A DNA stretch of 64,000 bases, taken from assembly GCF_963921235.1 (NCBI RefSeq), contig NC_086105.1:54188001-54252000 (forward strand), in the 5' to 3' direction. This document shows positions 23,791 through 64,000 of the stretch, piece after piece. The position numbers were made by a program, and so were the translations under genes. The DNA is from Mobula hypostoma (taxonomy: Eukaryota). The stretch's first letter is position 1. Each line of letters opens with the position of its first letter. The notes under the pieces are model-generated. The model saw only the letters and a program-made list of their open reading frames with translations, did no database searches and was not told where the DNA came from.

Positions 23791-23804
23791 CAAATCTTAC
23801 TTAC

Positions 23805-23888
23805 CTGCAAGTTTTTCTTAATTCGCTCTGGAGTGACAGACTTTGGAATTACAACCAGCCTTCTTTGAATCTGGAACCGGATCAAAAC
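23805..23888 (-). CDS. akr1b1: AKR1B-like exon 8
   Basis: ttcag|[28 protein letters not shown]|gtaagt. 84 nt. IPKS NADPH-binding motif. Confidence 0.96.
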
Positions 23889-24630: not shown

Positions 24631-26243
24631 CAGTGGATTCTGGTTAATCGGGCCATCAGTTAATAGGTGAAGCCACTTATTTTGGACAACACTTAATGAA
24701 CAAAAACTAAATCAAGAAAGTAGCCAAGATTCCCTTAATTCATTTGGGACACAATGTCACTTAATTAGGCAGCAGACGGTTGGTCATTGGCGCTTTTGTC
24801 ACTGTTAAGACTTCACCGTGCTTGGAACGACCAGTTTACACATGCTTGTGTGATGTTATGTTATCCACTTGAATGGACAGATTCAAAAAGCAGCAATTTT
24901 TGATGATTTTTAAAAAAGTTGTCTAATTGTCTTTTAAAAAAATTGAGATCGTTGCCAAATAAGCACCAACAGATTTGTCAATAGCCGAAAAAAATTACCT
25001 AGACCAAATTAAAACCCATCCACCCAACACCACTCAATGTGGGCTGGCAGAGATAACTGAGTGCCGAAATTGACAACTGCATCAGCAAGTTAAACTGTAA
25101 GAATGGGCATGACAAAAAGAATTATCCAAAAATAATGTGTGAAGGTGTTGGAGGCTCTCAATGGTTTTCCATTATAACTGGACAAGATGTGCATGATAAA
25201 GGACCAAATGTTAAAAAAGACAAGCCAGAGGGAGTAGCTAAGAAGCTGGGTAAAGAAGAATTTAAATGAACAGATGGCTGGTTATCTCAATGAAATGTCA
25301 GCACATTAAAGAAAGCACATGGTGAGAAAGGCAAAGCTGATGTTGCATATGTAGAAACAAGGAAATCTACAAACCTTCAAATTCAGTAATTTTACAGACA
25401 ATATCTGCAATGTCAATGAAATAGTTCTTTATAGTGTAGAATGTTTGAGAAACAGCCTTCCGGAATTTGTCTGACAATACAACATCCTTGGTGTAGCCAA
25501 TAGATATGTGAATCAAAAAATTTAAAGTTAGCGAACACATTAAAGAATTTGAAGAAAATCAATGACATCTTCAATAGCCTAGGAAGTGAGAGCAAAGTTT
25601 AATCTTTTACAGGCAGTATATTTTGTCAATAAAAGTTGGCAAGAAATAAGCAAGACAATTCAGAACTGTTTTGCTCAATGTAGTTTCAAGTGTTCAGGCT
25701 TAGAGATGCCAGAAATAGCTAAGAGTGAAAAGGAAATGATTTCACTACTTCAAGTTAGAAACTACAAAGAATTTGAAGGCATCAACAATCATCTTGAATA
25801 TTCTAAAGAAAATGAAGATTTGGAGGATGCAATCATTGAAAGCATTATATCAGAACACCAAGTGGGGAACGTTAAGACTAGGAAAGTGATGAGAATGACA
25901 CAATTGAACCTGAGCTTGACTACACAGGATGCCAGGAAATTATTTGGATTACAACACTGCTTCATGCAGGTAGACAATGAAGGCAATCCATTAGCTGCAT
26001 AGGTGTCTGCACTGGTTTTGTTCAAAGAATGTGCCAGCGTACACTTGACGAATTCCTCCATCTTTAAAGTAGTGGTAGTGTTCTAATTTGCTCTGTATTT
26101 AATTTAAATACAAACTATTCTTCAGTTAAACAGTACTTGTTCTTTTTTGTACCTAACTTTTCCATGAATCTTCTGCCAATTGGGGCAGCCACTCAACTGG
26201 GCCAAAACGTACTGGTCTCAACATGTCCGAATGGAATCCATTG
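24631..26243 (+). mobile_element. Tigger/pogo DNA transposon relic in AKR intron 7
   Basis: Terminal inverted repeat CAGTGGATTC...GAATCCATTG-TA. CENP-B-type HTH remnant (KKLGKEEFK.TDGWL). DDE_1 C-terminal motif NLLQAVYFVNKSWQEISKTIQNCF. Confidence 0.75.
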
Positions 26244-26340
26244 TATTTGAAATAAAATTAAAGTACATACGGTACAGCTACACGTAATGAACCAAAAAGC
26301 TAGAACTTGACACTGCTGCAGAGATTTAATAAGTTCCTAC

Positions 26341-26422
26341 TTGTGCAACTGACTTCCTATGGCGCTGTGCTATTTCCTGTAGCTTGGGATCCTCAAGGAG
26401 ATTAGGTTCATTTGGCTTTACC
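26341..26422 (-). CDS. akr1b1: AKR1B-like exon 7
   Basis: ttcag|(W)VKPNEPNLLEDPKLQEIAQRHRKSVAQ|gtagga. 82 nt, phase matches exon 6. Confidence 0.95.
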
Positions 26423-26569
26423 CTGAAATTAACGAAAGGAAATGGAATTAGTTGTGCAGAATCTCCTAGTAAGAACTTTCAGCAGCAATATATGATGCAT
26501 ATCGGTACAAGTGGCATGGAGAAGCTTAGCACAGAGGTAGATTGATTTTGAGATCCTCTAACTTTCCCA

Positions 26570-26893
26570 AAGATCACACCCACTTTCGACATTCTTCTCC
26601 CCTCTTCCGTCAGCCAAAAGATAGCACAGGCCTGAAAGCACATACCAGAGTCGAGGACAGTTTTTACCCTGCTCTTGTAAGACTATAAAATAGTTCCTTA
26701 GTACTACAAAATAAACCCGACTTCACAATCTACCTATGATCTTGCATCTCATTGTCTGCCCTACGCTTTCTCTCTAGGAGTTACATTATTCTGCATTTTG
26801 TATTGTTTTACCTTGTTCTTCCTCAAATTGATCTGAATGATTAGTATTCAAGACAAGTTTTCCACTGTACCTCAGTACAAGTGACAATAATAA
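26570..26893 (+). mobile_element. Rex1-like 3' end fragment
   Basis: FSPLPS..R...LKAHT...DSFYPA remnant and tail ttccactgtacctcagtacaagtgacaataataa. Confidence 0.6.
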
Positions 26894-27244
26894 GTGTGCA
26901 AAAATTGTAGCATGGTTTAAAAAAATTAGGGATTACTCAAAAATACATTATCTAATAAGAGCAAAGCAGAGATTATTTTTTGCAAATACATTTCTTAATG
27001 TACCAAGGATGAATCAATGGATGATCAGGTTTTGAAGAATATGGCAAATCAGATAGACAGTGTCAGGTAGGCACATGGCAAACAGTAATAATATTGTTTA
27101 GATTTAATAGAGAAGGACAATGGTCTTTCCATTATGTGTCCTCAAGATACACAGCTTTGCAGTTTGATTCTTTCATGTCAAGAGGTTGGCCAGATTACAC
27201 TGGAAATTTACTACAACTCTTTCTAAAGATTTGCAAAGATCTCT

Positions 27245-29570
27245 GAAGACCAGACCAGATTTATTAAAAATCATTATTCTCATTTTAACATTCGTTGTTT
27301 ACTGAATGTTATTTATTCTCCCTCTAAAGAAACTTTGGAATGCGTGATTTCTTTGGATGCTGAGAAAGCCTTTGACTGGGTTGAATGGAATTATTTACTT
27401 AAAATATTAGAAAAATTTAAATTTGGGTAAATTTTATTCAATGGATTAAATTACTTTATTCATCTCCCAATGCACAGGTTCTTATTAACTCTGAGCTCCA
27501 AACTATTTAACCTCCAACGTGGAACCAGACAAGAATGTCCTTTGAGTCCTTTGCTTTTTGTTTGGCTTTAGAGCTTTTAGCCATCGTGTTTCGAGAATCC
27601 ATTGACATCTCAGGTATTTTATGGAGGGGTATCACTCATAAGTTGTCACTTTATGCTAATGACCTTTTGCTCTACATCTCTAATGTGGAGTCCTCTCTAC
27701 CCTCAATACTCTTTACTTTCTGAATTTAGCCAGTTCTCAGGATATAAACTTAATCCTCATAAGAGTGAACTTTTTCCCTTGAATAATTTGGTATCAGTCA
27801 ACTCTGACCTTCCTTTTAAAATTTTGAGAAATCAATTTACTTATTTGGGTATAACAATTACTAGGAATTACAAATTTCTTTTTAAAGAAAACTCTCTCTC
27901 TCTTGGAATATATTAAGAAGGTACTATCAAATTGGTCTCCCCTTTCTTATCGCTGATTGGTCGTATTAATTCTACAAAAATGAATATTTTGCCTAAATTT
28001 TTTATAGTTATTTCAAGCCCTACCTGTTTTTATTCCTAAATCCTTTGACTCTTCAGATTCGATTTATATCTTCTTACTTATGGAAGAATAAAAACCCCCA
28101 ATTAAAAAAAGTTCATCTTCAGAAAAAAAAAGGGGGATTAGCCCTACCCAATTTTAGGTTTTACTACTGGGCAGTCAACATACGCCACTTTACGTTTTGG
28201 TTATACTACATTAATCGTGAAGACTGTCCAGTTTGGGTTTCTTCAGAAATTAATTCTGTTAATAAATGTTCTATTATTTCTCTTCTTGATCCTTTAATTC
28301 CTCTATCTTTACATAATTTAACTGATAATTATGTAGTTAAACATTTTTTGAGGATTTGGTTACAATTTAGAAAATTCTTTGGGTTATTTGGTTTTTCACT
28401 CCCATTTTTTCTAATTTTTTTTATACCTTCTTTGACCTATGTAGTTTTTAAAAGAGTGAAATAGACTAGGTATTAAATGTTTTCAGATCTGTTTGTTGGA
28501 GATGGTCATTCCTCATTTGATCAACTATTAATCTTCGTAAAGCTCACTTTTTTAGATATTTATAAATTAGAGACTTCTTGCATTCTCAACTTCATACATT
28601 TCCTAAATGTCCAGATAAGAACTTGATACAATTTTTACTTTGAAACCTTTTCATAATAGATCTATTTCTAATATTTATAGTATGTTGTTGGTAACGAGAA
28701 ACATTCCGTTAGACAAAATTAAAAACCTCTGGGAACAAGACCTACAGATTTCAATTGATGAGGATACTTGGAATGAAATTTTAAAACTTGTTCACACCTC
28801 TTCGTTATGTGCTCGTCACTCTCTTTTACAATTTAAAGTGGTTCAAAGAGCCTATATGACTAAAGATAACCTCTCTCGATTTTACTCAAGATTTTTCTCC
28901 ATACTGTAATAGGTGTAATATCGAAGAGGCCTCTCTAATTCATATGTTTTGGTCCTGCCCGCAGCTTGATAAATTTTGGAAAGAAGTATTTCAAACTTTC
29001 TCAGAGCTTTTTAAAAGTAAACTTTAAATCCAACCCCGACTGTCTTGTTTCGCATTGTTGGAGGAAATGATTTTACTCTTAAGCCAAATGATTTGCATAT
29101 TTTGGCTTTAATTTCTCTTGTAGCCAGAAGAGTTTTGTTGCTTAAATGGAAAGATGCCACTCCGCCTACTCATGTCCATTGGTTGATTGATGTTATGTCA
29201 CGTTTAAATCTGGAGAAGATTAGGTGTTCTGTTTCTATACCTAGACAAGATTTTTTCACATTATGGGGACCTTTTTGGAACTACTTTCACAATTTTCGAT
29301 TTGGCTATTATAGCAATGATGATGGCTATTATATGTTTGAATTTACGACTATATGTCAGATTTTTTTTTCTTGTAACCAAATAGCTTTTTTTTCCTTCGT
29401 TTTTGGTTTGTTATGGCATTTTGATTGTTTTAGATTAGAATAAAATATACCTTTTCAATATTATGGTTAGTTACTATACATAGTTATGGGGCACTTCAAT
29501 CTTGTTTCTGTTTCCATAATGTATTTTGTATTCGTCTATGTAAGTAATTAATAAAAATATTGAAAAAGAA
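27245..29570 (+). mobile_element. 5'-truncated L1-clade LINE in AKR intron 6 (antisense to the gene)
   Basis: SLDAEKAFDWVEW, GTRQECPLSPLLF, LSLYANDLLLY, SGYKLN, GGLALPNFRFYYWA. AATAAA and A-rich tail at ~29550. Confidence 0.9.
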
Positions 29571-29643
29571 AGTTGTCTTTATAAAATAAACTACAATATT
29601 AGCAATTTCTCATTACTAAAATAGGAGCAAATTACGTTAGTAC

Positions 29644-29750
29644 CATGGTCTGTCTGGAGATCCCAATGGACTATAGGCTGTCACAACAATATTGTTAGAA
29701 GTGCAATAGGAGATCAGATCTTCTTGAGTTAGATAAGGGTGGCACTCAAT
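29644..29750 (-). CDS. akr1b1: AKR1B-like exon 6
   Basis: ctag|[35 protein letters not shown](W)|gtacta. 107 nt, ends in phase 2. Confidence 0.96.
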
Positions 29751-29878
29751 CTAGTAAAACAAAAAAGAACACAATAAATGTTGATGAGAAATTTTCACAG
29801 AAAAAGGTAGTGTCAATAAATGCCATACTGAAAATAAGTGAACTTCTATAATGCCAAATTTTAAAAGTGATCAATTAC

Positions 29879-30001
29879 CTGGTTGACAGCCGGTCTGTAT
29901 TTCAAATTTTTTTTATTAAGGATGCGCTCTATCTGCTTACGATTAAAATTGGACACCCCTATAGCTTTAACCATATTTAGATCCACCAATTCTTCCATTG
30001 C
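29879..30001 (-). CDS. akr1b1: AKR1B-like exon 5
   Basis: tacag|[41 protein letters not shown]|gtaatt. 123 nt. IGVSNF signature. Confidence 0.96.
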
Positions 30002-30200
30002 CTGTAAATGGAAAATGATTATAATTAACAGTCAGATCAATTTAAATTTTAGACTGAAAACCATCCAGAATAATGTTTCAAGCAACTGAAGTCAAGGGAC
30101 CAATCTAACAACAAGAGCTTTAAGGAGGAAACATATTACAAGTTTAATTTCTAGATAAATCTAGTAACAATAAACTTAGATTCTTCAGTTACATACTCAC

Positions 30201-30278
30201 TTCCCAAGTGTCAACAAAATCTGTGTCACTTGGTATTACCATCCCATTCCCATCAAGAGGAAATTTCTCCAGGCCAGC
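30201..30278 (-). CDS. akr1b1: AKR1B-like exon 4
   Basis: ttttag|AGLEKFPLDGNGMVIPSDTDFVDTWE|gtgagt. 78 nt. Confidence 0.95.
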
Positions 30279-30819
30279 CTAAAAGGAGATATTTTAGAAA
30301 CAAGAACAAAAAGCATGACTTAAATTACTGAGAAAGGAGGTAGACCCAAGTAGGTTAATACATGCCAACATTTAAGAGCTGTTTGCAAGTTTGCCTTTGG
30401 TTTGTTTTCATTTATATTACAGAATATACTTCATGTCCAAGTCTTATCAAATTGTATTCACTACATATCCCTTGACATTACTCAACAAGAGGAACACATT
30501 GGCATGCAAGGGCACGGGTCCTGTGTTTCTTCTAACTGGGCCAAAGAGGCTGTTCTGCATTGTATGTTCGATGTTCCAGTATGGCTTGCTACTACCTAGC
30601 AATGTTCCTATGAGTCACTTCAATGTAATTCAGTTGGCTTAGATTTCTCATAAATGAATTTTAAAAAACCTCAAGTACAGTACCTGACCCCCCAAAATTT
30701 ACTCATTTTAAACAACCCACTGAGTACTTGGCTATCTAAGGGTCCAAATAATTTAACTCGAGCAGTGTGCAAATTAACCTAGAGAAAGATATACAAAATT
30801 GTTTTGCCAGGCAGTTTAC

Positions 30820-30936
30820 CTTGAATCCCATAGGCCAATGAATAAGGTACAGATCCAGATAGTCCAATTTCAGGTCACTTAATGTGTTAGAACAGGCATC
30901 CTTCACCAGGTCTTTGGCATGAAATGTACACCACAG
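30820..30936 (-). CDS. akr1b1: AKR1B-like exon 3
   Basis: ctag|[39 protein letters not shown]|gtaaac. 117 nt. Catalytic His in LIHW. Confidence 0.96.
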
Positions 30937-31027
30937 CTAGCAGGAAAACAAAACTATTCATTAGTGCATTGATATTGCTAAAGTTAAATTATACTTTAGC
31001 GACCTGGCAGCACCCCAAATCCTTTAC

Positions 31028-31195
31028 CTTGCTAACAATGAAAAGATCTTCACGCTTTACAGTTCCATCCTTGATCTTCGCCTGAATAGCTTCACCAACT
31101 CCTTTTTCATTGTCATACACAAATGCATCATCAATGTGACGATAACCAGCTTCAATGGCCGTTTTCACTGCTGCTGTCACTTTACCTAGTTCAGA
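31028..31195 (-). CDS. akr1b1: AKR1B-like exon 2
   Basis: ttcag|[56 protein letters not shown]|gtaaag. 168 nt. Carries the catalytic Asp, Tyr and Lys. Confidence 0.96.
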
Positions 31196-32388
31196 CTGAA
31201 AAGAAAAGTGCTTCTAATTAAAATTCAAATGGTAAGGCAAAGCCAAATGAAACAAATATAAATGGCACTCAATTCAAATTTAAGCATTTCAAAACAGCAA
31301 AGCTAAAAACATTCTTCCAACATCCTCTTTAGCCTAGAATTTAACCAAGCTCTACCAGAGCAGATCACAAGTCAGGTATCTTTTTTTTTGAGTGACACCT
31401 CCTGACAAAACCTTTCCAACTACCAGCCACAAGTAAGAAATAAAAAGGCAAAGGACAGCTGCATTTACACTTGGGAAGCTTGACATCAGTGGTAGCAGAC
31501 AATGACTTCCAACTCATTCACCAGTCTAGACATGCCCAATCCCACCAGAACTGAAACGCAAAGTATCCATAAAATAGTTAAGTCTTCTAGGTCACTCCAT
31601 CAGCACCTCTCTAAAGCACAAACTTTATCACTGAGACAAGGACAGTAAGTGATGAGAACATGGCCAAATGCAAGTTCACATGGAAAAAAAAATTATATCC
31701 CCTCCCCCCACAGTCACTGGGCCTTGAACTCTAACCAAAAGAACTATTTGAAGTACCTCTCCAGAACAACCACTGAGCCTCAAGATGGTGGATGAGCATC
31801 ACCACTAAAGGCAACAGGTTGTCTCTGCTACTACAACCAACAAGCCATAAAATGGGTGAAATCAGGACTGTTGAAGGGCCTCAGCCCAAAACATTGACTG
31901 TTTACTCTTTTGCATAGATGCTGCCCAGCTTGCTGCATTATCCAGCATTGAGTGTGATTTCTAGTATCTACAGATTTTGTGTTTGAAAATCCTAAGGATA
32001 CTGCTTACAGCAGACTTTAGGTTCTGTTAGTAATACAGCAAATCTGCCCTGCCATACACCAAACTTTTCTAGCACAGTCTTAATCCTGACACTCAGCCAA
32101 CCAAAAGCATTACCAAGTACTAAAAGGATCCCTTGACAATGCTATCAAGTGCCATTCTAGAAGCAGCAGGTGAAGTGACTCAAGTCTATTCACCATTTGA
32201 AGATAACAGCTCAATGGCTGACTGGATATTAGCTTGACCTCCAATTTGCTGCCCAAACCCAATTCCACCAGAACCCAGAAATCTGTTTCAGGCTTAAACA
32301 TATCCAATAATGCAACCTTCTCAGTACTCTGGAAAGTAGGATGCCAGGGACTTACAATCCTCATACAAGATTCCTCATTGTAATTTTT

Positions 32389-34023
32389 GGCTCCTCCCAC
32401 TTCCTCCAAACTAAAGGTGTAGCTATGGGCACCCGTATGGGTCCTAGCTATGCCTGCCTTTTTGTTGGGTTTGTGGAACAATCTATGTTCCGTGCCTATT
32501 CCGGTATCTGTCCCCCACTTTTCCTTCGCTACATCGACGACTACATTGGCGCTGCTTCCTGCACGCATGCAGAACTCGTTGACTTTATTAACTTTGCCTC
32601 CAACTTTCACCCTGCCCTCAAGTTTACCTGCTCCATTTCTGACACCTCCCTCCCCTTTCTAGATCTTTCTGTCTGTCTCTGGAGACAGCTTATCCACTGA
32701 TGTCTACTATAAGCCTACTGACTCTCACAGCTATCTGGACTATTCCTCTTCTCACCCTGTCTCTTGCAAAAACGCCATCCCCTTCTCGCAATTCCTCCGT
32801 CTCCGCCGCATCTGCTCTCAGGATGAGGCTTTTCATTCTAGGACGAGGGAGATGTCTTCCTTTTTTAAAGAAAGGGGCTTCCCTTCCTCCACTATCAACT
32901 CTGCTCTTAAACGCATCTCCCCCATTTCACGTACATCTGCTCTCACTCCATCCTCCCACCACCCCACTAGGAATAGGGTTCCCCTGGTCCTCACCTACCA
33001 CCCCACCAGCCTCCGGGTCCAACATATTATTCTCCGTAACTTCCGCCACCTCCAACGGGATCCCACCACTAAGCACATCTTTCCCTCCCCCCCTCTCTCT
33101 ACATTCCGCAGGGATCGCTCCCTACACAACTCCCTTGTCCATTCGTCCCCCCCCATCCCTCCCCACTGATCTCCCTCCTGGCACTTATCCGTGTAAGCAG
33201 AACAAGTGCTACACAAGCCCTTACATTTCCTCCCTTACCACCATTCAGGGCCCCAAACAGTCCTTCCAGGTGAGGCATCACTTCACCTGTGAGTCGACTG
33301 GGGTGATATAACTGCGTCCGGTGCTCCCGATGTGGCCTTTTATATATTGGCGAGACCCGACGCAGACTGGGAGACCGCTTTGCTGAACATCTACGCTCTG
33401 TCCGCCAGAGAAAGCAGGATCTCCCAGTGGCCACACATTTTAATTCCACGTCCCATTCCGACATGTCTATCCACGGCCTCCTCTACTGTAAAGATGAAGC
33501 CACACTCAGGTTGGAGGAACAACACCTTATATTCCATCTGGGTAGCGTCCAACCTGATGGCATGAACATCGACTTCTCTAACTTCCGCTAAGGCCCCACC
33601 TCCCCCTCGTACCCCATCTGTTACTCATTTTTATGCACACATTCTTTCTCTCACTCTCCTTTTTCTCCCTCTGTCCCTCTGAATATACCTCTTGCCCATC
33701 CTCTGGGTCACCCCCCCCCTGTCGTTCTTCCCGGACCTCCTGTCCCATGATCCTCTCGTATCCCCTTTTGCCTATCACCTGTCCAGCTCTCGGCTCTATC
33801 CCTCCCCCTCCTGTCTTGTCCTATCATTTTGGATCTCCCCCTCCCCCTCCAACTTTCAAATCCCTTACTCACTCTTCCTTCAGTTAGTCCTGACGAAGGT
33901 TCTCGGCCTGAAACGTCGACTGCACCTCTTCCTACAGATGCTGCTTGGCTTGCTGCGTTCACCAGCAACTTTGATGTATGTTGCTTGAATTTCCAGCATC
34001 TGCAGAATTCCTGTTGTTTGTGT
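32389..34023 (+). mobile_element. Penelope-like element (RT C-half, GIY-YIG endonuclease, pseudo-LTR) in AKR intron 1
   Basis: GVAMGTRMGPSYA, LRYIDD, GVIY..RC..CGLLYIGETRRRLGDRFAEH. Near-perfect 14-bp TSD TCATTGTA(A/G)TTTTT at 32375 and 34024. Confidence 0.92.
33886..33921 (+). ncRNA. Minimal type I hammerhead ribozyme motif in the Penelope pseudo-LTR
   Basis: AGTC-CTGACGA-AGGT(TCTCG)GCCT-GAAA-CGTC-GACT: both core boxes, helix I AGTC/GACT, helix II, and a palindromic helix III, as known for Penelope-like elements. Confidence 0.7.
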
Positions 34024-36984
34024 TCATTGTAGTTTTTCCCACTTATTCTGAACGTTCATCTCTGCCCAATCAGTTTTTCCATAGAAGGCAACATCTTCAG
34101 TATCCTGCTTCATAACTTCTTCAGCATATTATTTCAGTATCACCTCCATTTAGATCCTGACTGCTTAATACTTCTTCATAAGACAAGCCCTTCATTCCAA
34201 GAATCCACTTACCAATACTTTTGCACCATCAGAGCCACTTGTTTCAGAGCTAATTTACAATCTTGGTCCTAATACAGAGAAGATGGAAAAGACAAATTCC
34301 AGAGATAATACAAGAGATTTGACACAATAGATGCAACATGACTAAGTGCAACATCAAGGAGTCCAAATAAAATTGCACCAATAAGAATGAAGATATGAAC
34401 TCTCCAATCTCTATTCATATCTGAAAGAAGCTGGTTCTGATTGCTAGAGGTTAATCATTTCAACTCCAGAGCATCATTTCAGGAGGCATCAGAGCTATCT
34501 TCAGCTTGTTTAATGACATTTTCTTCACAAGGTCAGAAGTGAAGATTTTCTTTAACATTCGCTTAGTGTGCAGTTCCATTTGTTACTCCTCAGCTAACGA
34601 GGTGGTCCATGCCCACAGCCACCATGACCTAAATGGCACTGGGTATAATTGGCCAGTAAGGTTTGTGCCACACAAGAATCAGGCATCAACCATCAGCAGC
34701 AAGTCTGACCACTTTTATAATTTCAACTGCAGTATTATTACTGCATTCCCTTCTCAATATGCTGAGCATCAGCCCTGTCCAGAAACACTCTGACCAGATA
34801 CAGCAAGTTTAGTTATGTGAAGTGTCATTATCTTGGATAGTACTTTGATAATCTGACAGTTACCAATTGTGGCCAGATTCGAGCAGAGGTTGGGCACCCT
34901 ATGATCACCAAGTGACCACCTGACTCCTGAACACCTTAATAACTGATTAACTAATAACAGGTGAAATGTATGGTATTTGTTGTTTTCCTGGATAAATGCA
35001 ATTGTCGCAATATCCATGGAATAGGTCAAGCAGTAGGGCAAGACCCCAAGCCTGTTCTGCCATCTAAATACCTAGTTTTCCCACCCAATTCCCCCATCTC
35101 TCTCACAATAGAATTCAGGAACTTACAGAATCTTAACCTTTGACATGTTCAACAGCTGCACAGCCACAGCTCAAGAGTATAATCTTTTATTTTAAGAAAT
35201 CAATCCTCAAGTGAGGAACTTCCAGCTGACTTCATTAGCCAGTCCCTAATCCCAAAACAAAATCTCAGATTTAGTAATCCCAGCCATCAGAAAGTACCAA
35301 AGGAATAAACCTATCAACATTGACAATTTCCTTCCTAATCATATCTTAGCATTTCCTGAAATCATAAAAATTCTGCTCTATGTCTCCTCATGGAACAGCT
35401 TTCTCATCCCAACACATCTTAAGATCCTTTGTTGCATTGCTTTCAAGCTAAATATGGTTGAGATAAACAGACAATAAATCACATAGTAATCATGCCATAC
35501 AGCTTTACTAATTCAATTGCTTGCTAACCAGACAAAAACATCTCATTTCACTTAACCACACTCAATTTTTTCTAAAAACTGAGCATTCTACAAGTGAGTG
35601 GCTTCTTCAAAATCCTCACATTAAACCACTCTGCCACATTCTTGCCTATCCACCTGTATCCTCTTCTAACTTGTGTACTTTAACTTAAACTTCCTTACAC
35701 AAGTTTTACATCACCAGTACGCTTGCATATATTAAGATCAGGTATCCAGTTGTAGACAACAAATAACCAAAGCTCAATTACTGATCCTGACAGGTACCCA
35801 GTAATTATTTTTTGTCACTGTTAAAAATCTCCCTTCAGCTTTTATTCTGTAATGTCTAACCATGTCAAAATATTTACCTCAACCTCGAGCCCTTTCTTAC
35901 ATAACACCTTTACCTGGCACCTTATCAAAATTCCTTTCAAAAATTTCTTTCATATAACCAAGGTCACTGTACTACCAATGTTATTCAAATATTTCAATTA
36001 GATCCTTCAAAACGAAAGTCAAGATGTTATACAACACAGAACAAGACCCCACCCCCCAACATCACATCCAGACTAAAGTTATTCTCTCCACCGCCACGAC
36101 ACAAGGATTTTGTTAATCAAAAGTTAGAGCAATTCACTATAGCTCATCTATACTGCCAATTCAGGGAACACAGTTTTGACTTTGAACTTATAATAATTTA
36201 TGGAAAATTACTGACTTGCTCCCACACTGTCCAATTTTGCTTTGATGCTTGTATATGCACATAGCAGTTCAAACCTACAACACTTCTCACTTCGATTTTA
36301 TTCTTTCCTCTATTACTTCAACTTTGAAGGCTGACATCCCTATTCATAAGCTTCACTTGTGGTGCTTGCTACTATAAGAAAATCACCAAGCTCTTCTGTG
36401 CAAGACTCAGTGGCTCTAACATCCATCTTTTGTCTTCATTTCCTCTTCAAAACAATATTTGCTGCCACTTGCATATTTCTCTCTGCACGTCCACAGTTCA
36501 ACTTGCAGAGGCTTAAGCCTTTCTTCAGCATAAATTGCCATTACAGTCAATACTTGTACCTTCATTTTCTGCACTCCCCTCCCCTACACTTTTGCCTGCT
36601 TCTTCAATTCTTTCATTTGTGCATGACTTACTCTTGCAAGATACATCTACAATGTACAAACAATCCTCCCTACATACAGCACCAAAACCTAATGGAATAG
36701 AAAGCCATTTCATCAATCTTGCCCATGCCAGTAGGAAAAGATCCACCCATTTGAATTCCACATGTCAGCAAATGATCAGCTTAAGTGTAACAAGCCTCTA
36801 TCATCTGTTCAGGTATTGTTCTATATTAGTACCATCATCATTTGGGTTAAAATTAATATCCACTCAACATACTTGAAAACTATTCTCTTGGCTTTCATCC
36901 CTGTTGACAAATGGTTCTATACTATGCTGGTATCTCAATTAAAAAAAAGTTTCTTCCTAGCTTCCTCAGTGCCAAATAATTTGA

Positions 36985-37375
36985 ACCATCTGATTGAACT
37001 TGGCCTTTTTTCCTTGGAGCAACGGAGGATGAAAGGTGACCTGATAGAGGTGTACAAGATAATGCAAGACATTGATCATGTGGAAGGCCAGAGGCTTTTT
37101 CCCAGGGTTGAAGTAAGACAAGGGGCACAGTTTCAAGGTGCTTGCATGTAGCACAAGGAGGATGCCAGAGACAAGTTTTTCCACAGAGTAGTGGGTGCAT
37201 GGAATGCACTGCCAGCAAAGGTGGTAGAGACAGATACAACAGGGTCTTCTAAGAGACTCTTAGATAGATATACAGAAAGAAAAATAGAAGGCTGTGCGGT
37301 TGGATACATGGGTGACTCAAGATTGTAGGCCAAAGGGCCTGTAATTGTAGGACTAATGTGCTGTAGATTTGTGTT
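36985..37375 (+). mobile_element. CR1 3' end fragment
   Basis: ELGLFSLEQRRMKGDLIEVYKIM plus 3' UTR. Confidence 0.8.
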
Positions 37376-39579
37376 CCAGCACATCTTTCCTGTGAAAATG
37401 ACACCAAGCTATATGCATTAAAGTTGACAAACTGGAAATTTCATATTACAAGTGGTACTGGAATACTCAGGTCAAGTGGAAACTGAGTAGTTCTGATGAA
37501 TGACACTGGGCTCCACTGTTCATCATTTTCATTCTATGAAACCTGCCTGACTGAATGTATCCACAGTATTTTTCACTTCCATTTTCCAGGATCTACATGC
37601 TTGTTTTTGCTTTGATTTTGTTTCTATAGTTCTGGCAATATCAGCATTTTATATTCCATTCCTCAAAAACCATCACATACCATACTAAGCCATACTCCTT
37701 TCCTTGTTAATCCTCTCCACCCTTCTATACTAGCAAGGGCATGCTCACATGTTTTGAAGAAATAGGAGTAGACCACTCAGTAAGATCACCAGTTTCTGCC
37801 CCAAACAGCTTTTATCCTGCTCATCTCCATATCTTAGTATCCAGAGATCTTTCAATCTCAGTTTTGTATGGCATCAAAGCCTTTATCCTTCTAATGATAG
37901 CCCATCAACTCAAAGTAAATGCTTCAATTACTACAACAAATGAAAATGCAAAATTCCAGATGAATTTCAGATTAGGCAGTACTTGAAAAACTGAGGGTTG
38001 CAGACACAAAAATTGCCCCACCTGTTAAGCTTTTTCCTAACTTTTCCGTTTGTTTCAGATTTCTAGCATCTGCATTTAAATTTTCCCTTTATTCCTTTCC
38101 TTCCAACCAACATATCCATGCTAGTACTTTATCACCAATGTCCAACTTGTGTGGACCTTATCACAAGCTTTCTGAGAATTAAAATACATAATTTGTACTC
38201 GCTCCACTCTCCTCAAAGAAATCCAATGCATTGTCATGCACAATTTCCCTTTTATAAACCCATTGTTCACTATTCAGTCATTTGACAGCTTTCCTCCTCT
38301 TTGGCTCTCAGTGCTTTCCCCAATTCTGATATTATGTTAATGTAAAGAATGTTATCCTTTACTGACAATATGCATGGGCTGTTGGCGTATACCCACCCAA
38401 CACCAGACATCTCCCCCCCCACCCCCCCCGTAATCCATTCCATCCTCAGAATTTGAATGCTTTCACTATTCATGTAATGCCTTCCATTTGCTTCATTCAA
38501 TCTTGATTTCTGCCACTCTGAAAAAGTTGCTTTCAGTCTACCTCAATGAGAAAGAATGTCATCAAGCTGTAAAAACAATACACCTGAGGTCCCAGTACTT
38601 TCAGACGGCTCAAAGGATTCAAACTGTACCACTTACCTGTCTTAAGCACAGGAATTATCACTGGATAAGCTGTGATGTGGCAGCAGGCAGTCACCAGAAA
38701 GACCTGTGGTAACTTTAGGTTCAGTATGGGATCTGTACTTGGCGGCATTGAGACTTGATCAGGCAACCAAGGCCGGTAACATCAAAACTCATAATTGGAT
38801 AACCATGTAAAGTGGCATTCGGAGTTTTGAAAGAATTATTGTTTATTTCCCTTGCATAGAATGTTGACTGATCACACCCACCTCTTTCTCCACTTACTGG
38901 TTACTTTCATCTTACAGGCTTAATGTTAAACAGTGAATTTCCTCCAATTGATCATGAAAATTACTTAACTGAAAACATGACAAAATTCTCAATTCAAAAA
39001 GTATAACTCATCCTAGCTTTCCAAATCAAAATTGTTTGTAATGTGAGTAGGTCCAGCCAATCTTTGCTCACCTTTAAACACCCTCCCTGGTCATTCACAA
39101 TACTACTTAGCAAAGTTTTAAACCCTACATCCCAAAAATTATCAAGATCTCTTACACCCTTAGCATCATCACAGCTAACACTACTACTGCTAGAATTCAC
39201 ATCTATGGTAGTTCCAAACAGCTTTGGTACCCAACATTCTCCATAAAATATTTAAAATACTGTATTTGCCACATTGAACTCAACAAGTCAAAATAATATC
39301 ATTTCTTTTTAAGTAAAAAAGAAACAAACAGAATAGTTACTTCTGGTTAGAACTATTTGCACAATTAAAAGCTCCGGTCATCAAAAATTGGTCAGACCTC
39401 AGCTCTGCAGTATGAACACTCACTGGCCAAGAAATTCTAGTAGTGTACACTCAGGCAATGGGTCAATTGAGTAGCAGTCCAAACATTCAGAGCAATCAAG
39501 AGACAAGGAGCACAGACTGGAAATAGAGGATTCAACAAGAAGGAATACCAGGACGAATACTGTACAAAATGGAGATGAG

Positions 39580-40442
39580 ATAAAACCTTAAGATATAGGA
39601 GCAAAAGGCGGCCATTTGGCCCATCGAGTCTGGTCTGCCATTCAATCATGGGCTGATCCAATTCCTCCAGTCATTCCCATTCCCCTGCCTTCTCCCGATA
39701 CCCTTTGATGCCCTGGCTAATCAAGAACCTATCCATCTCTGCCTTAAATACACACAAATGACTTGTCCCCCACAGCCACTTGTGGCAAATTCCACAGATT
39801 TACCACCCTGACTAATTTCTCCGCATCTCAGTTCTAAAAGGACATCCTTCAATCCTGAATTCTCTCCCCATCTAAATGTCTGCCCGTTTATTTCTTCCAA
39901 AGTGCATGACCATACTTTCCAACATTGTATTTCATTTGCCACTTCTTTGCCCATTCCCCTAAACTATCTAACTCTCTGCAGCTCTGTTTTCTCAATAGTA
40001 CCCGTTCGTCCACCTATCTTTGTATCATCGGCAAATTTAGCCACAAATCCATTAATACTGTAGTCCAATTCATCGACATACATCATAAAAAACAGCAGTC
40101 CCAACACCAAGCCTTGTGGAACTCCACTGGCAGCCAGCCAGAATAGGATCCCTTTATTCCCACTCTGTTTTCTGCCAACCAGCCAATGCTCCACCCACAC
40201 TAGTAACTCCCCTGTAATTCCATGGACTCTTACCTTGCTAAGCAGTCTCATGAGCGGCACCTTGTCAAAGGCCTTCTGAAAATACAAGTACACCACGTTT
40301 CCTGTATTTCCTCTGTCTACCCTGCTTGCAATTTCCTCAAAGAATTGCAGTAGGTTTGTCAGATATGGTTTTCCTTTCAGGAAACCATGCTGGCTTTGGC
40401 CTATCTCGTCATGTGCTTCCAGGTACTCTGTAATCTCATCCC
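39580..40442 (-). mobile_element. Internally deleted CR1
   Basis: YLYFQKAFDKVP, SGVPQGLVLG, KFADDTKIGG and a CR1 3' UTR. Confidence 0.85.
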
Positions 40443-40516
40443 AGAAGGCATTCTAGTCCAGCAGTGCTGACCAGAATTCGGTGACTAAAGGTCACCAACA
40501 AACTGCAATCCAGTTT

Positions 40517-40722
40517 CACACATCAAAGTTGCTGGTGAACGCAGCAGGCCAGGCAGCATCTCTAGGAAGAGGTACAGTCGACGTTTCAGGCCTTAACGAA
40601 GGGTCTCGGCCTGAAATGTCAACTGTACCTCTTCCTAGAGATGCTGTCTAGCCTGCTGCGTTAACCAGCAATTTTGATGCGTGTTGCTTGAATTTCCAGC
40701 ATCTGCAGAATTCCTGTTGTGT
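40517..40722. mobile_element. Inverted pair of Penelope pseudo-LTR ends (palindrome)
   Basis: Arms 40517-40592 and 40608-40683 are reverse complements, and both match the 33905-34020 pseudo-LTR end. Confidence 0.85.
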
Positions 40723-41149
40723 TCAATCCAGGTTTCCCCATTATGCTCAAAACGGCGTGTTGTCTGGAAACGATCTCCCCAAGCAGACATGGCACAAATA
40801 CTTTGGAGATGAAACTGTGAATTCAGATTATTTTCAGCTGGAGATAAATGAAGGCATAAATCTAAAAAGAAAATAAAAAAACTAAGAGCACCTATTGGCT
40901 GTTTACTCGTTAGATTAGATTCACTCTTACACTTCCACCAGATATTTACATTCCGGTGCTGGATAAAACAGATACAAAAGCTCAATTCTACCCGGGCATT
41001 TGTCCATTAGTGAAAACAGAAAACTCGAACTTCTGACTTAGTCTGCAAGGCATCACATTAGTACGTTGACACTGGACCTATAGATTTAAACATCAACACC
41101 CTCCCCAACTCCTATCTCCCACCCGAATTTTTTTTTGTTCAGGATTATT

Positions 41150-42250
41150 CTGGATAAAGACAGCGCTGCGGATGCAAAATATGTTCCTTCAGATAACGGC
41201 GAAGGAGAATATGACAAGTTGAAACAAAGATATCATACAGACACTTCTTTATTAAGGAATTGCTTGCACGCTTTCGCTTTAAAGACGAAGTTCCTTTGCG
41301 AGAATACCCCCCCCCCCCCCGCCAGCGCACATCTATGCGAGCAGTAACGCCCCTACCTCGGGGAGATTCACAGCACTGTCCGGTCCCAGAACTCGGGCAC
41401 CCCTCACTCAGTCTCGCCTGCGCTGCAATGAACACCCCCCCCCCAACACAGCGTGTTAACCCGCGTCTGAACAACCTTCCCCCCCCCACACTATCAGTTC
41501 TTCACTCGGACCGAGATCGAGTCGGCCATGTGCGCCACAGATGGTGATCGCGCGTCCCCGCCCCCACCCCATCACCTCAGCGCTTGGGGGGGCAACCCCC
41601 GAACACACGGTTCGGCCCGCATGCTCTCGGGGTACGGACCGCTACCCCATTCCCCCCCACCCCACCGGGCGGGGAGTGACATTGACCAAGCGCACAGAAC
41701 TCCGGTGAGGTTTAATTTTGCCGAGTGCCCATCCTTCGAGTTACTGAACGGAACGGCGGCAGCTGCCTCACTCACTTTCCAGGTCCCCAGCCCAACAACG
41801 GGCATGTGAGCTCCAGTGTTGAGGGTAATAGTCCAAGCACCACCACCAGCCATGACGCACACTAATAGAAGATTCTGTCTGTATCTAGTTTTACGGCGGT
41901 TAGCATCCAGCTTAACAGTGCATTACCGCCACGTAGAAGATTCTAGCAAGCACGTTCGTTTAAATGGAAAAAATAAACTCGTACCCGCCCCCACCCCGCT
42001 CCTGAAGCCAATTCCTCCTCTGATTGGCTGCTGTCGCTCAAAGGTGGGCTTTACACACTGCTCTCCTTTACCCTCCCAGCCCGCCTGCTGACGCCAGTCC
42101 TTTCTCCGATTGGCTAACAGGCGCTGTCATTTAAAGGGCGCCCGCAATAGACCCGCCCCTTCCAAACCGGTTATTCGCCCACATTCCTCCTCCCTCCCCC
42201 CCCCACCCATGCACCATCGGGTCTACTGACCCTCTGAACGGGAAAGAAGG
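41150..42250 (-). promoter_or_regulatory. CpG-rich promoter/first-exon region of the AKR1B-like gene
   Basis: Sharp CpG enrichment relative to the flanks. TATA-like CATTTAAA on minus (41959-41966). GC boxes cccgcccc at ~41984 and ~42152. CCAAT/ATTGG boxes at ~42008, ~42023 and ~42109. Confidence 0.8.
41776..41853 (-). CDS. akr1b1: AKR1B-like aldo-keto reductase (aldose reductase-like), coding exon 1 of 10
   Basis: ATG at 41853 in context gtcATGG. Encodes MAGGGAWTITLNTGAHMPVVGLGTWK (AKR GLGTWK motif), followed by donor GTGAGT. 78 nt. Symbol is the closest family member; exact orthology is not provable here. Confidence 0.93.
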
Positions 42251-60145: not shown

Positions 60146-61410
60146 ATCTCTATTTTGAGGCTGTTCTGAGACCACATCCTTTCTTAGATAAGAGCCCTGT
60201 GCTCAATACTCCAAGTGAGGCCTCACTATTGCAATATGAAGTCTCAACATTATATCCTTGCTTTTACATTCTAGTCCTCGTGAAATGAATGCTATCAACA
60301 TTTGCCTTCCTCACCACTGAATCAACCTGTAATTTAACCTTTAGGGAACTTGTGTGAAGATTCCCAAGCCACTTTGCACCTCAGATTTTTTGAATTCTCT
60401 CTCCATTTAGAAAATAGTTAACCTTTTTATTTCTTCTACCACAGTGCATGACCATACACTTTACAACTTTGTATTCCATCTGCCACTTGTCGTCTTTTCT
60501 CCTTCCTCAAACCTACCTGCCCCTCCACCTATCCTTGTATTGTCCACAAACTTGGACAAAAAACCATGAATTCCATTATCCAAGTTATTGACATATAATA
60601 TAAAAAAGCAGTCCCAACACAGAAGCCAAGTCCTATTGTCACCTATATCACTTGATTTTACTTTGAGGTGATAGTGTCTAGAATTGCCACTTTGCCCTTG
60701 AGATGGCTCTCCAGAGATCGTACTTAGTTACTCCTCCACATTAAACTTGCTTCCTCATGTAGGACAGGTGCATACAAAGTTGACTGTGCTGAGTGTGCCT
60801 TTCCAGCTTTCAGAGGGACCAGAACAGTCATCTGCATTGTTCAGACCATGATGCTGCATTAGCCAACCCTGTGGAAGGTCATCAGATTTCCTTCAAACAG
60901 GAAATTAGAATTTAACTCCTACACTCCTCTGGAAAATCTGGTGGTTATCATCTGCATTAATATCATGATGTTTCTTTGCTTTATTCAATTTCATCAGTTT
61001 GGTGCAGTTTTATTTATGAGGGCAGGCCTCTGGATTATTAGTGTGGTAGTCATCAACATAATGTTAGCTCATTACATAATTCTTGTATGACATTTCCTGA
61101 ATTTATGAAATGGGATAAATTCCTCGCAAATGTTTTGAGTGGAAAAAATTTGTCAATGGACAAAAAACAAAACCTATTACTGGAATTTTTGATAGTTCCA
61201 ATTGCCAAGTTGCACCCATTCGAAGGTATGTGTCTTATGTCAAACTGTTATATTCCTTTCAGTGAACAATTTGGCAGTTCAAGCTCTGTGACCAAATGGA
61301 ACCAGCTCTGAATGAAACTCAAGCAGTTACATGAAGTTATTCTGGGATTATTATACCAGCCTGTAGAAACATAACAGTAAACAGAACTATCATGTTGTGA
61401 AGTGATACTG

Positions 61411-61742
61411 GTGCTTCCAGGATGCTGCATCGGCAAGTTTGCGGCACTGGAAGCTCATGGCAGGGAGAGTTTTCTTCCTTCTACCACCTGTGTGAGATGT
61501 TGGGACTTTCGAGAGACTTTGAGACTTTTTTTTACCGTGCCCATGGTCTGTTCTTCTATCAAATTACAGTATTGCTTGCGCTGTTGTAACTATATGTTAT
61601 AATTATGTGGTTTTTGTCAGTTTTTCAGTCTTGGTCTGTCTTGTGTTTCTGTGATATCACACTGGAGGAACGTACCATTTCTTAATGCATGCATTACTAA
61701 ATGACAATAAAAGAGGACTGCATGTCCTCATAATCTAATCTA
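61411..61742 (+). mobile_element. Short retroposon (SINE or LINE 3' end) with (AATCT)n tail
   Basis: TSD ATACTG at 61405-61410 and 61743-61748. 3' stem-loop GAGGAC-tgcat-GTCCTC. Absent from both homologous sites (~11150 and ~62115). The same tail occurs at 19141-19187. Confidence 0.8.
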
Positions 61743-62787
61743 ATACTGAAGAGTTGGACTTCAGAATTATAAATTTATGTCTACTGTAAACTGGTTTCAT
61801 AAATCAAGTGAAGTTTTATTTTTCCTACAATCAGACTCTTGGTAATCTTTGATCTACATCATTAATTCTTAACTGCCAAGTCTATCAAAAATACCCATAA
61901 ACAGCCTGGTCTTTGTTTGAGGGAAAAATTTGGAAAGACCGGGCTACTTATGGGTATTTTTGATATAGTATTTTACTGTACTTGGCAGTTAAGAATTAAC
62001 GATGTAGATCAAAGATTCCAAGAGTCTGATTGCAGAAAAAATAAAATTTCTTTTGATTTATGAAACCAATTTATAGTAGACATAAATTTATAATTCTGAA
62101 GTCCAACTCTTCAGTATCACCTCGCAACATGATAGTTCTGTTTAGTGTTATGTTTCTAAAGGCTGGTATAATAATCCCAGAATAACTTCATGTAACTGCT
62201 TAAGTTTCAATCAGAGCCGGTTCCATTTGATCACAGAGCTTGAAACTGCCAAATTGTTCACTTAAAGGAATACAACAGTTTGACATAAGACACATAACTT
62301 TGAATGGGTGCAACTTGGCAATTGGAACTATCAAAAATTTCAGTAATAGATCTTGCTATCTATATATAGTTTTACACTCACATTTGGCACATGACAAAGC
62401 TGCCTGGTGCATGATGGGCCCATGGCCAACAAGAAACTTACCATTTGCTTTAAGCCCTTAAGGCATAAAATCAAATCACACCCAGCAACAGATGCTATGA
62501 AATAACAAAAATTTGATAAACTGGAGCCAGGAACAGAAAATTGATTCTGGATTTGCACAGCGAGAAAATGGAGGCATCTCAGCAAGAGTGGAATGTTTAT
62601 TCACATCATTGATACAAGCAGAAAGTTACACTGCTAAAACACATCACTGTACAGTGATTTGTTCTTCAAAATATTACAAATGGGTTTGTATATTAATTCT
62701 GCTGTCCAAGACTACAGATAGGACAACCATAAAAGAAACTTAAATTTTCAGACAGCTTGTTCCATCTGAAGCAGTTAGTTTGTAATC

Positions 62788-62818
62788 TCAAAAAGGATAG
62801 TCCTTGTGGTTAACACAC
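62788..62818 (-). CDS. Terminal coding exon of a second, tandem AKR1B-like paralog (rest lies beyond the window)
   Basis: Identical 31-nt coding sequence (W)CVNHKDYPF-TGA with intact ttttag acceptor, inside a duplicated block. Functional status cannot be judged from this exon alone. Confidence 0.8.
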
Positions 62819-64000
62819 CTAAAAGAAAAAGTTAGTTTCCATTTTAAGGGCAGGCAAATAAAAGGCTACACACCCCAAGGTGTCTTGCCCGCAATTTTAT
62901 TAAGTTTTGTACTTCAGCCATAAATAAAATTATTCAGATTAGTGTTCAACACAGACCTTTACTGCAACTCCATTGCCTCAGAACCAGGCACTACTGACAG
63001 ACGACTCCAGCTCCAACACCTCCCAACCAGAAATCTAGCCCTCAGTTGTAGGGAACAGGCTTGTGGGTGTTGGGAAGCAGCAGAAGCAATACTTTAGAGA
63101 AGCCTGGTAGGCCAGTAACAGAAGGGGGCAAATAGAGATGTGGAAGGGGTCATACAATGGCTTCACTTCTCTGGGCAGCAAGTCTACAGTTATTGATTAT
63201 AAGCCAGGCCCTTATTTGATACACTGCACACCCCACTGGCCAATGCTCCACCCTTCCTACAATCAGACCCATAAGCTCCAAGGTAAAGCCCATGTGCACT
63301 TTTCCAGATGATTGCTACTCTTGTATTTCAAATGTAATTAACAACTATTAACATGTACAGTATACTTTCATAATTGCAATTCCTTTCTATAAAACGCTAT
63401 GTTAAATGCTGATAACTGAATGTAGCAATTTTTTTTGCAGACTAACAGCTCAGAGACCCCCTCCCCCATTTCCTTGCTGTTTTTAAATAAACATTTTGCT
63501 CTATTTCCAAGTTTATTTTTAGTTAAATTTGGGTCAGAAGTATTTAAGGGACTGAAAGTGTACAAATTGAGCTTGATAAGGATATAAAAATTCTCTGCAA
63601 TTCAGTCAGAAACATTTTTCCCTACAATGAGCTTGTACTTTTGCACATTTTCCATTGACTTTGCTTTGGCTGCTTGGCTGAAAGGAAGACTGGTTGCCAA
63701 AGTGACAGGTGAAAGGCAAAAATTATGAAATGAACAAGTAACTGCAGGTCATTATCAGATTAAACCCACAAAGCTCAATCAGAATCAGGAAAATTGCAGT
63801 TTGAATTCAAAAGACAAATCAGATACTAAGCTCTTGTACACTTGACCTTTCTGTATCAGAGGTTATATGGTGATAGTTGTGTTAGAGGTACTTGAATAAC
63901 CAACTTAAATGTAGTTGAAAATGTAATTTGTACACAATTTAGTACAAAACTTCTGGCCAGAAGCTATTATTGGACAGGAGGAACCGAGCTTTTGACAACC

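What the first reader, a model, noticed from the sequence alone, without database searches (positions are those of the whole stretch)
61174..62349. ~400-bp fold-back inverted duplication inside the putative 3' UTR of one AKR paralog only
Seen: 61174-61410 plus 61749-61914 is the reverse complement of 61934-62349, with a 19-nt loop (61915-61933). The arms are the gene's own UTR sequence, not a transposon, and lie between the stop (62788) and the conserved AATAAA sites (~60980-61013). The sister gene (10925-11245) has a single arm. Known: long UTR dsRNA is a substrate for ADAR, Staufen and Dicer. Inference: the hairpin could regulate this paralog. The inverted arm is also antisense to the sister gene's 3' UTR, so it or derived siRNAs could act on the sister mRNA in trans, giving a paralog cross-regulation circuit.
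Basis: partly seen in the sequence, partly recalled or inferred. Interest (0 to 1): 0.72.

Follow-up and report, generated by a model that had tools for sequence, protein, structure and literature searches.

The report
Decayed inverted duplication beside a ray gene
A roughly 415-base stretch just downstream of one copy of an aldose-reductase-like gene in a devil ray was copied back-to-front next to itself long ago; the structure is real, but nothing shows that it is in the messenger RNA or does anything.

Summary
Left arm 61168-61410 + 61743-61914 is the reverse complement of right arm 61934-62355. Identity is 93.4%, the spacer is 19 nt, and the BLAST E-value is about 3e-101. The arms are local sequence, not a repeat found elsewhere in the window. 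The sister gene copy has one arm only (10917-11247).

The 332 nt that split the left arm are a retroposon with a 6-bp target-site duplication (ATACTG) and an L2-type tail. The window is Mobula hypostoma; the sister is its annotated AKR1B1-like gene.

The arms differ from each other less (K2P 0.07) than from the sister (0.11-0.12). The inversion therefore came after the gene duplication.

The regulatory reading has no support:
- Both copies keep a canonical AATAAA 166/188 nt after the stop, upstream of the hairpin.
- Identity between the copies is flat (84-92%) in intron, putative UTR and beyond, so the "conserved" distal AATAAA tells nothing.
- The arms decay evenly and mostly by transitions, with no significant bias toward G:U pairs.
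- No protein of the second copy turned up in the searched collection.
- No transcripts or DNA from related species could be fetched.

Most likely this is a neutral, decaying local inverted duplication.

The parts
61168..61410 (.). Left arm, outer segment (ancestral copy, collinear with sister 10917-11153)
   Evidence: 94% complementary to 62112-62355; 90.2% identical to the sister
61411..61742 (+). 332-nt non-LTR retroposon (SINE or 5'-truncated LINE) inserted into the left arm. The 6-bp target-site duplication ATACTG lies at 61405-61410 and 61743-61748. The 3' tail has a stem-loop GAGGACTGCATGTCCTC followed by ATCTA repeats.
   Evidence: the right arm and the sister show the empty site GGTGATACTGAAGAG; the same 46-nt tail at 19141-19186 (96%); no tRNA or Rfam match
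61743..61914 (.). Left arm, inner segment. 61743-61846 matches sister 11148-11247. 61847-61914 (segment X) has no counterpart in the sister.
61915..61933 (.). 19-nt single-copy spacer (the hairpin loop)
61934..62355 (.). Right arm: the derived, inverted copy of segment X plus the ancestral arm. It carries 13 extra nt near the centre (within 61971-61990).
62356..62520 (.). 165-nt segment Y, found in this copy only, between the right arm and the sequence shared with the sister. Its origin is unresolved: either ancestral and deleted in the sister, or inserted here.
   Evidence: no match elsewhere in the window
62596..62601 (-). Proximal canonical AATAAA, 188 nt after the stop and upstream of the hairpin. 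It is conserved in the sister (11353-11358, 166 nt after its stop).
61815..61820 (-). AATAAA inside the left arm. It is absent from the sister.
60980..61014 (-). Distal pair of AATAAA hexamers, 1775 and 1804 nt after the stop.
62789..62820 (-). Last coding exon of the second AKR1B1-like copy (encodes ...CVNHKDYPF, then the stop at 62789-62791), preceded by an AG acceptor. It is the only exon of this copy in the window.
10917..11247 (.). The single, uninverted arm downstream of the sister gene
11524..41853 (-). Sister gene: Mobula hypostoma AKR1B1-like, 10 coding exons. Its exons match P0375 and P0153 at 100%.

Best explanation
This is a neutral structural relic: a local inverted duplication in the downstream flank of one copy of a tandemly duplicated AKR1B1-like gene of Mobula hypostoma. 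After the two gene copies had diverged, about 415 nt of unique flank (segment A plus segment X) was copied in reverse orientation right next to itself, leaving a 19-nt spacer. This is the pattern expected from a replication template switch or fold-back repair synthesis; that mechanism is inferred. The near-palindrome has since decayed by about 7%, acquired a 13-nt indel near its centre, and been split by a retroposon insertion. Most transcripts of the gene, if it is expressed at all, probably end at the conserved AATAAA 188 nt after the stop. In that case the hairpin is mostly intergenic DNA with no selected function. If read-through or a long-UTR isoform exists, the RNA would form a stem of roughly 415 bp, interrupted by the 332-nt insertion, and would be an ordinary ADAR or dsRNA-binding substrate.
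For: - Geometry and identity of the arms.
- The left arm is collinear with the sister on its outer side and carries on into shared sequence, so it is the original copy. The right arm is the extra copy.
- No other copy of the arm, of X or of Y exists in the 64-kb window, and no target-site duplication flanks the unit.
- K2P between the arms is 0.068, against 0.106 and 0.124 between each arm and the sister. The inversion therefore postdates the gene duplication.
- Decay looks neutral. Polarised changes number 8 on the left arm and 13 on the right, with 20 transitions to 7 transversions. Mismatches that remain G:U number 13 in sense RNA and 7 in antisense RNA, which is not significant.
- A retroposon with a clean 6-bp target-site duplication sits in one arm only.
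- A proximal AATAAA conserved in both copies lies upstream of the hairpin.
- Identity between the copies is flat across intron, putative UTR and the sequence beyond it.
- Fold-back and template-switch routes to inverted duplications with short spacers are documented (PMC3907307, PMC11724301, PMC10766183).
Against: - No expression data could be obtained, so use of the distal poly(A) sites cannot be excluded. The distal AATAAA cluster also exists in the sister.
- The exact junctions and any microhomology are blurred by later divergence.
- Without an outgroup it is unknown whether X and Y are ancestral.
- A stem of this length surviving 7% divergence without deletion could also reflect some constraint.
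- The arm was tested for repeat status only within 64 kb.
Confidence: 0.68

Rival explanations
1. The hairpin lies in a real long 3' UTR isoform of the second gene copy. It acts in cis as a dsRNA element (ADAR editing, Staufen binding, nuclear retention or translational control), as inverted Alu pairs do in human 3' UTRs.
For: Distal AATAAA hexamers lie 1775-1804 nt after the stop, and the equivalent cluster exists in the sister. The RNA fold gives -701.7 kcal/mol. The effects of 3' UTR inverted repeats are well documented and depend on alternative polyadenylation (PMC11263572, PMC4378195, PMC3458544).
Against: A canonical AATAAA with a U/GU-rich downstream stretch lies 188 nt after the stop and is conserved in both copies. 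Another lies inside the left arm. There is no excess conservation of the putative UTR and no pairing-preserving bias. A retroposon disrupts one arm. No protein of this copy was found in the collection.
Confidence: 0.2
2. The locus works like a hairpin-RNA (hpRNA) gene. Dicer cuts the stem into siRNAs, and those from the inverted arm silence the sister gene's mRNA in trans.
For: The inverted arm is antisense to the sister's downstream region: 88.7% identity, a longest perfect run of 30 nt, and 20 perfect 21-mers out of 402. In Drosophila simulans, hpRNAs arise from inverted copies of their targets, some of them inside existing transcription units (PMC10317233, PMC10292708).
Against: Both genes would have to use distal poly(A) sites, since the sister's target segment starts about 280 nt after its stop, beyond its proximal AATAAA. 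From general knowledge, vertebrate somatic cells process long dsRNA poorly, and such RNA goes to ADAR instead. Few perfect 21-mers remain. No small-RNA data exist.
Confidence: 0.04
3. The inverted structure is a fold-back or MITE-type transposon, and the sister's single arm is a half-deleted copy.
For: Other short palindromic repeat families occur in the window, for example 40517-40683 with copies at 33893-34017 and 57089-57193.
Against: The arm has no further copy in the window. No target-site duplication flanks 61168 and 62355. The sister is collinear with the left arm across its outer boundary, so that boundary is not an element end. The arms are closer to each other than to the sister.
Confidence: 0.05
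4. The structure is an assembly or long-read artefact, such as a palindromic chimeric read.
For: Near-palindromes with short spacers are a known artefact class; this rests on general knowledge.
Against: The arms differ at 27 sites and several indels, and one arm alone carries a 332-nt insertion with its own target-site duplication. An artefact would have near-identical arms.
Confidence: 0.02

Closest known systems
Local inverted duplications formed by fold-back priming or replication template switching (PMC3907307, PMC11724301, PMC10766183)
   Same: An inverted copy lies directly beside its source, with a short single-copy spacer. The duplicated sequence is local and unique, with no transposon hallmarks.
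   Different: The published cases are either very large (kilobases to megabases, in human patients) or very short (5-34 bp, at yeast breaks). This one is about 415 nt, old and decayed, and its junction microhomology can no longer be read.
Inverted SINE pairs in 3' UTRs (IRAlus; mouse CTN-RNA) (PMC11263572, PMC4378195, PMC3458544)
   Same: If transcribed, it would give a stem of several hundred base pairs downstream of a coding region, a substrate for ADAR, STAU1 and NONO. Its inclusion in the mRNA would depend on the choice of poly(A) site.
   Different: The arms are not transposon copies but a duplicated piece of the gene's own flank. Inclusion in the mRNA is not shown, and a proximal poly(A) signal lies before it.
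Drosophila hpRNA loci that yield endo-siRNAs (PMC10317233, PMC10292708)
   Same: A long inverted repeat made from sequence homologous to a paralogous gene. Some hpRNAs arose next to their progenitor gene or inside an existing 3' UTR.
   Different: hpRNA arms usually carry exon sequence of the target, and the loci are defined by Dcr-2-dependent siRNAs. Here the homology is to non-coding flank, the animal is a vertebrate, and no small-RNA evidence exists.

Membership tests
Local inverted duplication (fold-back / template switch) | An inverted copy next to its source, with a short spacer | tested here: met
   19-nt spacer between arms of 415 and 422 nt
Local inverted duplication (fold-back / template switch) | The source is local single-copy sequence, and the unduplicated state is seen in a homologous locus | tested here: met
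   The sister has one arm, collinear with the left arm, and the window holds no other copy. Genome-wide copy number was not testable.
Local inverted duplication (fold-back / template switch) | Microhomology at the junctions | tested here: inconclusive
   The junctions at 61914/61934 and about 62355-62357 are blurred by roughly 7% divergence and by indels
3' UTR inverted-repeat dsRNA element (IRAlu type) | Two inverted copies close enough to pair within one RNA | tested here: met
   The RNA fold gives one long stem at -701.7 kcal/mol
3' UTR inverted-repeat dsRNA element (IRAlu type) | Both arms lie inside the mature mRNA's 3' UTR | tested here: inconclusive
   No transcripts were available. AATAAA sites at 188 nt (before both arms) and 969 nt (inside the second arm) lie ahead of the distal sites at 1775 and 1804 nt
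3' UTR inverted-repeat dsRNA element (IRAlu type) | The arms are copies of a SINE or other transposon | tested here: not met
   The arms are locus-derived. The only retroposon is the 332-nt insertion in one arm
3' UTR inverted-repeat dsRNA element (IRAlu type) | A-to-I editing, or binding by STAU1 or NONO | not testable with these tools
   Needs RNA-seq or CLIP data
hpRNA / endo-siRNA hairpin locus | A long inverted repeat homologous to a target gene's transcript | tested here: inconclusive
   The homology is to the sister's downstream flank (88.7%; 20 of 402 perfect 21-mers). Whether that flank is part of the sister's mRNA is unknown.
hpRNA / endo-siRNA hairpin locus | Dicer-dependent 21-23 nt small RNAs from the arms | not testable with these tools
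   No small-RNA data. The Rfam miRNA matches at the hairpin tip are far below threshold (26.5 against 80 bits)
Fold-back / MITE transposon | Several dispersed copies, and a target-site duplication at the ends | tested here: not met
   There are no other copies in the 64-kb window. The flanks...ACAAAAAA and CTATCTAT..., are unrelated. This was tested in the window only.
Non-LTR retroposon (the 332-nt insertion) | A target-site duplication, an empty site in homologous copies, and a LINE-type 3' tail | tested here: met
   The ATACTG duplication, empty sites in the right arm and in the sister, and a tail shared with 19141-19186
Aldo-keto reductase family 1B (the host gene) | Aldo_ket_red domain, and identity to annotated AKR1B1-like proteins | tested here: met
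   The sister's exons match P0375 and P0153 (Mobula hypostoma AKR1B1-like, PF00248) at 100%. For the second copy only the last exon could be seen.

The most novel reading that the evidence does not exclude
A long-UTR isoform of the second AKR1B1-like copy carries a stem of about 415 bp made from its own flank. The inverted arm, or small RNAs cut from it, lowers the sister gene's long-UTR mRNA. That would be a vertebrate counterpart of Drosophila hpRNA-target pairs, born from a local inverted duplication between tandem paralogs.
Probability: 0.04. Interest if true: 0.7.

Novelty: new member of a known kind. Interest (0 to 1): 0.2.

Why it matters
As it stands, this is a well-dated example of how a local inverted duplication arises in unique DNA and then decays, through divergence, a central indel and a retroposon insertion. 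It is useful as an illustration but not surprising. It would matter only if expression data showed the hairpin inside an mRNA. It would then be a rare case of a gene-derived, rather than transposon-derived, 3' UTR dsRNA in a cartilaginous fish, with a ready paralog control that lacks the second arm.

Tried and rejected
1. Transcript evidence. I looked for Logan or ENA transcript contigs through the protein searches: an exon-seeded profile, the full protein and the C-terminal 127 aa. No Mobula transcript-derived protein turned up, so the 3' end could not be read.

2. Orthologous DNA. The look-up of encoding contigs for the M. birostris genes (P0154) and for the M. hypostoma gene (P0375) returned gene ranges only, with no DNA because the files are too large. 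The range of 30,330 nt equals the CDS span, so it gives no UTR information.

3. Rfam scan of 60500-63000. It gave only sub-threshold miRNA-like matches at the hairpin tip, which reflect hairpin shape alone.

4. tRNA scan of the insertion. Nothing was found, so it cannot be called a tRNA-derived SINE.

5. Earlier notes of the scan, by place, by words and by sequence. Nothing at this locus.

6. Transposon origin of the arms and assembly artefact. Both were considered and rejected; see the rival explanations.

7. Conservation of the poly(A) signals between the copies as evidence. Rejected, because identity is flat at 84-92% everywhere.

8. A metagenome or bacterial-genome DNA scan for the arm. 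Not run, since those collections do not hold ray genomes.

Full report
**The observation**

The repeat finder and a BLAST of 60500-63000 against the whole window give five contiguous inverted blocks. Together they pair 61168-61410 + 61743-61914 with 61934-62355 around a 19-nt spacer (61915-61933).

With the intervening 332 nt removed, the arms are 415 and 422 nt. They show 381 matches, 27 mismatches (20 transitions, 7 transversions) and 21 gap columns, which is 93.4% identity and K2P 0.070. The BLAST E-values are about 3e-101 and 1e-89. Folded as the minus-strand (gene-sense) RNA, 61150-62375 forms one long stem at -701.7 kcal/mol, with the 332 nt as a side branch.

**What splits the left arm**

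The stretch 61411-61742 is a retroposon insertion. The right arm and the sister copy both show the empty site GGTGATACTGAAGAG. The left arm reads ...GTGATACTG[332 nt]ATACTGAAGAG, a 6-bp target-site duplication.

The element ends in a short stem-loop followed by ATCTA repeats. The same 46-nt tail occurs at 19141-19186 at 96% identity. That is the pattern of an L2-type LINE tail shared with its SINEs, an assignment I make from general knowledge. ARAGORN and Rfam find no tRNA or other RNA-gene head. I therefore call it a non-LTR retroposon, either a SINE or a 5'-truncated LINE. It postdates the inverted duplication.

**Organism and genes**

Minus-strand ORF pieces between 41853 and 11524 encode a 10-exon AKR1B-type protein. 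A phmmer search with exon 2, followed by profile and single-sequence searches, led to P0375 and P0153. These are "aldo-keto reductase family 1 member B1-like" isoforms X1 and X2 of Mobula hypostoma, and their exons match the window at 100%. The recorded gene range of 30,330 nt equals the CDS span seen here. The window is therefore M. hypostoma, and the "sister" is that annotated gene.

The window contains only the last exon of the second copy, encoding ...CVNHKDYPF and then the stop at 62789-62791, with an intact acceptor. Its exon 9 lies beyond 64000.

No M. hypostoma protein other than the sister's two isoforms appeared among candidates of 160-507 aa or 70-222 aa. M. birostris, by contrast, has several such genes. 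This suggests, but does not prove, that the second copy is not annotated as protein-coding.

**History of the locus**

A self-comparison of the window shows that 10032-14276 is collinear with 60365-63999. The tandem duplication therefore covers intron 9, the last exon and at least 2.4 kb of downstream flank.

The sister has a single arm (10917-11247), collinear with the left arm on its outer side. The left arm is thus the original copy and the right arm is the extra one.

Relative to the sister, the second copy has four additional pieces between the arm and the shared sequence that starts at 62521:
- segment X (61847-61914)
- the spacer
- the inverted copy of X plus the arm
- a unique 165-nt segment Y (62356-62520)

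Without an outgroup I cannot tell whether X and Y are ancestral and were lost in the sister, or were gained here.

K2P is 0.068 between the arms, against 0.106 and 0.124 between each arm and the sister. The inversion therefore happened after the copies split, at roughly 0.6 of that age. It is not at the edge of the tandem duplication.

The pattern is an inverted copy abutting its source, a short spacer, unique sequence and no flanking target-site duplication. This fits a template switch or fold-back synthesis (PMC3907307, PMC11724301, PMC10766183). That mechanism is inferred, and microhomology can no longer be read at the junctions.

An assembly artefact is excluded by the 27 substitutions, the indels and the insertion present in one arm only.

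**Is it in the 3' UTR?**

On the gene strand, canonical AATAAA hexamers lie 188 nt (62601), 969 nt (61820, inside the left arm), 1775 nt and 1804 nt after the stop. The sister has them at 166, 759/763 and 792 nt.

The proximal one is conserved in both copies. It is followed by CA dinucleotides and a U/GU-rich stretch. It lies upstream of the whole hairpin.

But identity between the copies is 84-92% in every segment tested: intron 9, stop to proximal signal, arm, arm to distal signal, and 600 nt beyond the distal signal. Conservation of any hexamer therefore says nothing about use.

No transcript data could be reached. Whether the hairpin is ever in mRNA remains open. On sequence alone I judge a short UTR that ends before it to be more likely.

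**Signs of function**

None were found.
- With the sister as outgroup, 8 changes fall on the left arm and 13 on the right.
- The changes are mostly transitions.
- Of the 27 mismatches, 13 stay G:U in sense RNA, 7 stay G:U in antisense RNA and 7 pair in neither. This difference is not significant.
- One arm has tolerated a 332-nt insertion.

For action in trans, the inverted arm would be antisense to the sister's flank. Only 20 of 402 21-mers are perfect matches, and the longest perfect run is 30 nt. The target segment lies beyond the sister's own proximal AATAAA.

Inverted repeat pairs are not rare in this window; several transposon-derived pairs appear. What sets this one apart is its length, its short spacer and its non-transposon origin.

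**Comparison with known systems**

If transcribed, it would behave like a 3' UTR inverted SINE pair: ADAR editing, STAU1 or NONO binding, and dependence on alternative polyadenylation (PMC11263572, PMC4378195, PMC3458544). It fails the transposon-arm criterion for that class, and its inclusion in a UTR is unproven.

The cross-paralog idea mirrors Drosophila hpRNAs, which arise from inverted copies of their targets, sometimes next to the progenitor gene or inside an existing 3' UTR (PMC10317233, PMC10292708). No defining feature of that class (small RNAs, Dicer dependence) can be tested here. From general knowledge, vertebrate somatic cells rarely process long dsRNA that way.

The structure does meet the tested criteria for a local inverted duplication.

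**Verdict**

The origin part of the reading holds: own sequence, one paralog only, not a transposon. The regulatory part is unsupported speculation that sequence evidence mildly disfavours. The structure is best read as a neutral, decaying inverted duplication (confidence about 0.68). Interest is low unless expression data place it in an mRNA.

Noticed in passing
window 2465-7344: An LTR-flanked element. Two 866-bp direct repeats (2465-3329 and 6479-7344) are 99.3% identical and enclose one 977-aa open reading frame (3380-6310) with a SCAN (capsid-like) domain and a CCHC zinc knuckle. No protease, RT or integrase match was seen. It is either a young gag-only LTR retroelement or a domesticated gag-like gene. 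It lies in the sister's downstream flank only.
   Followed up: partly
window 40517-40683; also 33893-34017 and 57089-57193: A 167-nt self-complementary (85%) short element with at least three copies in the window. It looks like a MITE family. One copy lies about 1.1 kb downstream of the sister gene's first coding exon, inside its first intron.
   Followed up: no
window 43963-45854 vs 49402-51293; N run 51831-51978: A 1.9-kb direct duplication at 97% identity, with further matching blocks (49283-49656 vs 51351-51724), lies next to an assembly gap. A tandem array sits at 42761-43277. This intergenic stretch between the two gene copies is repeat-rich and may be imperfectly assembled.
   Followed up: no
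window 12257-13998 (sister intron 9): A LINE fragment, with inverted or direct relatives at 32386-33607 and 57751-58863, is present in the sister's intron 9 but absent from the matching intron of the second copy. It is another insertion that postdates the gene duplication.
   Followed up: no
window 30198-30290 (sister exon 4); proteins P0375 and P0153: The annotated isoform X2 (P0153, 290 aa) skips exon 4, which removes 26 residues from the barrel. The sister protein also reads [10 protein letters not shown] where the M. birostris paralogs read IDCAFLYENE, next to the catalytic Asp and Tyr. It is only 93-94% identical to them, while they are 99% identical to each other.
   Followed up: partly
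window 59852-60202 and 9732-9980 (minus strand): ORF fragments with LINE reverse-transcriptase C-terminal-like motifs lie just downstream of both gene copies. There was no Pfam match at E below 0.01, so they are probably decayed non-LTR elements.
   Followed up: partly
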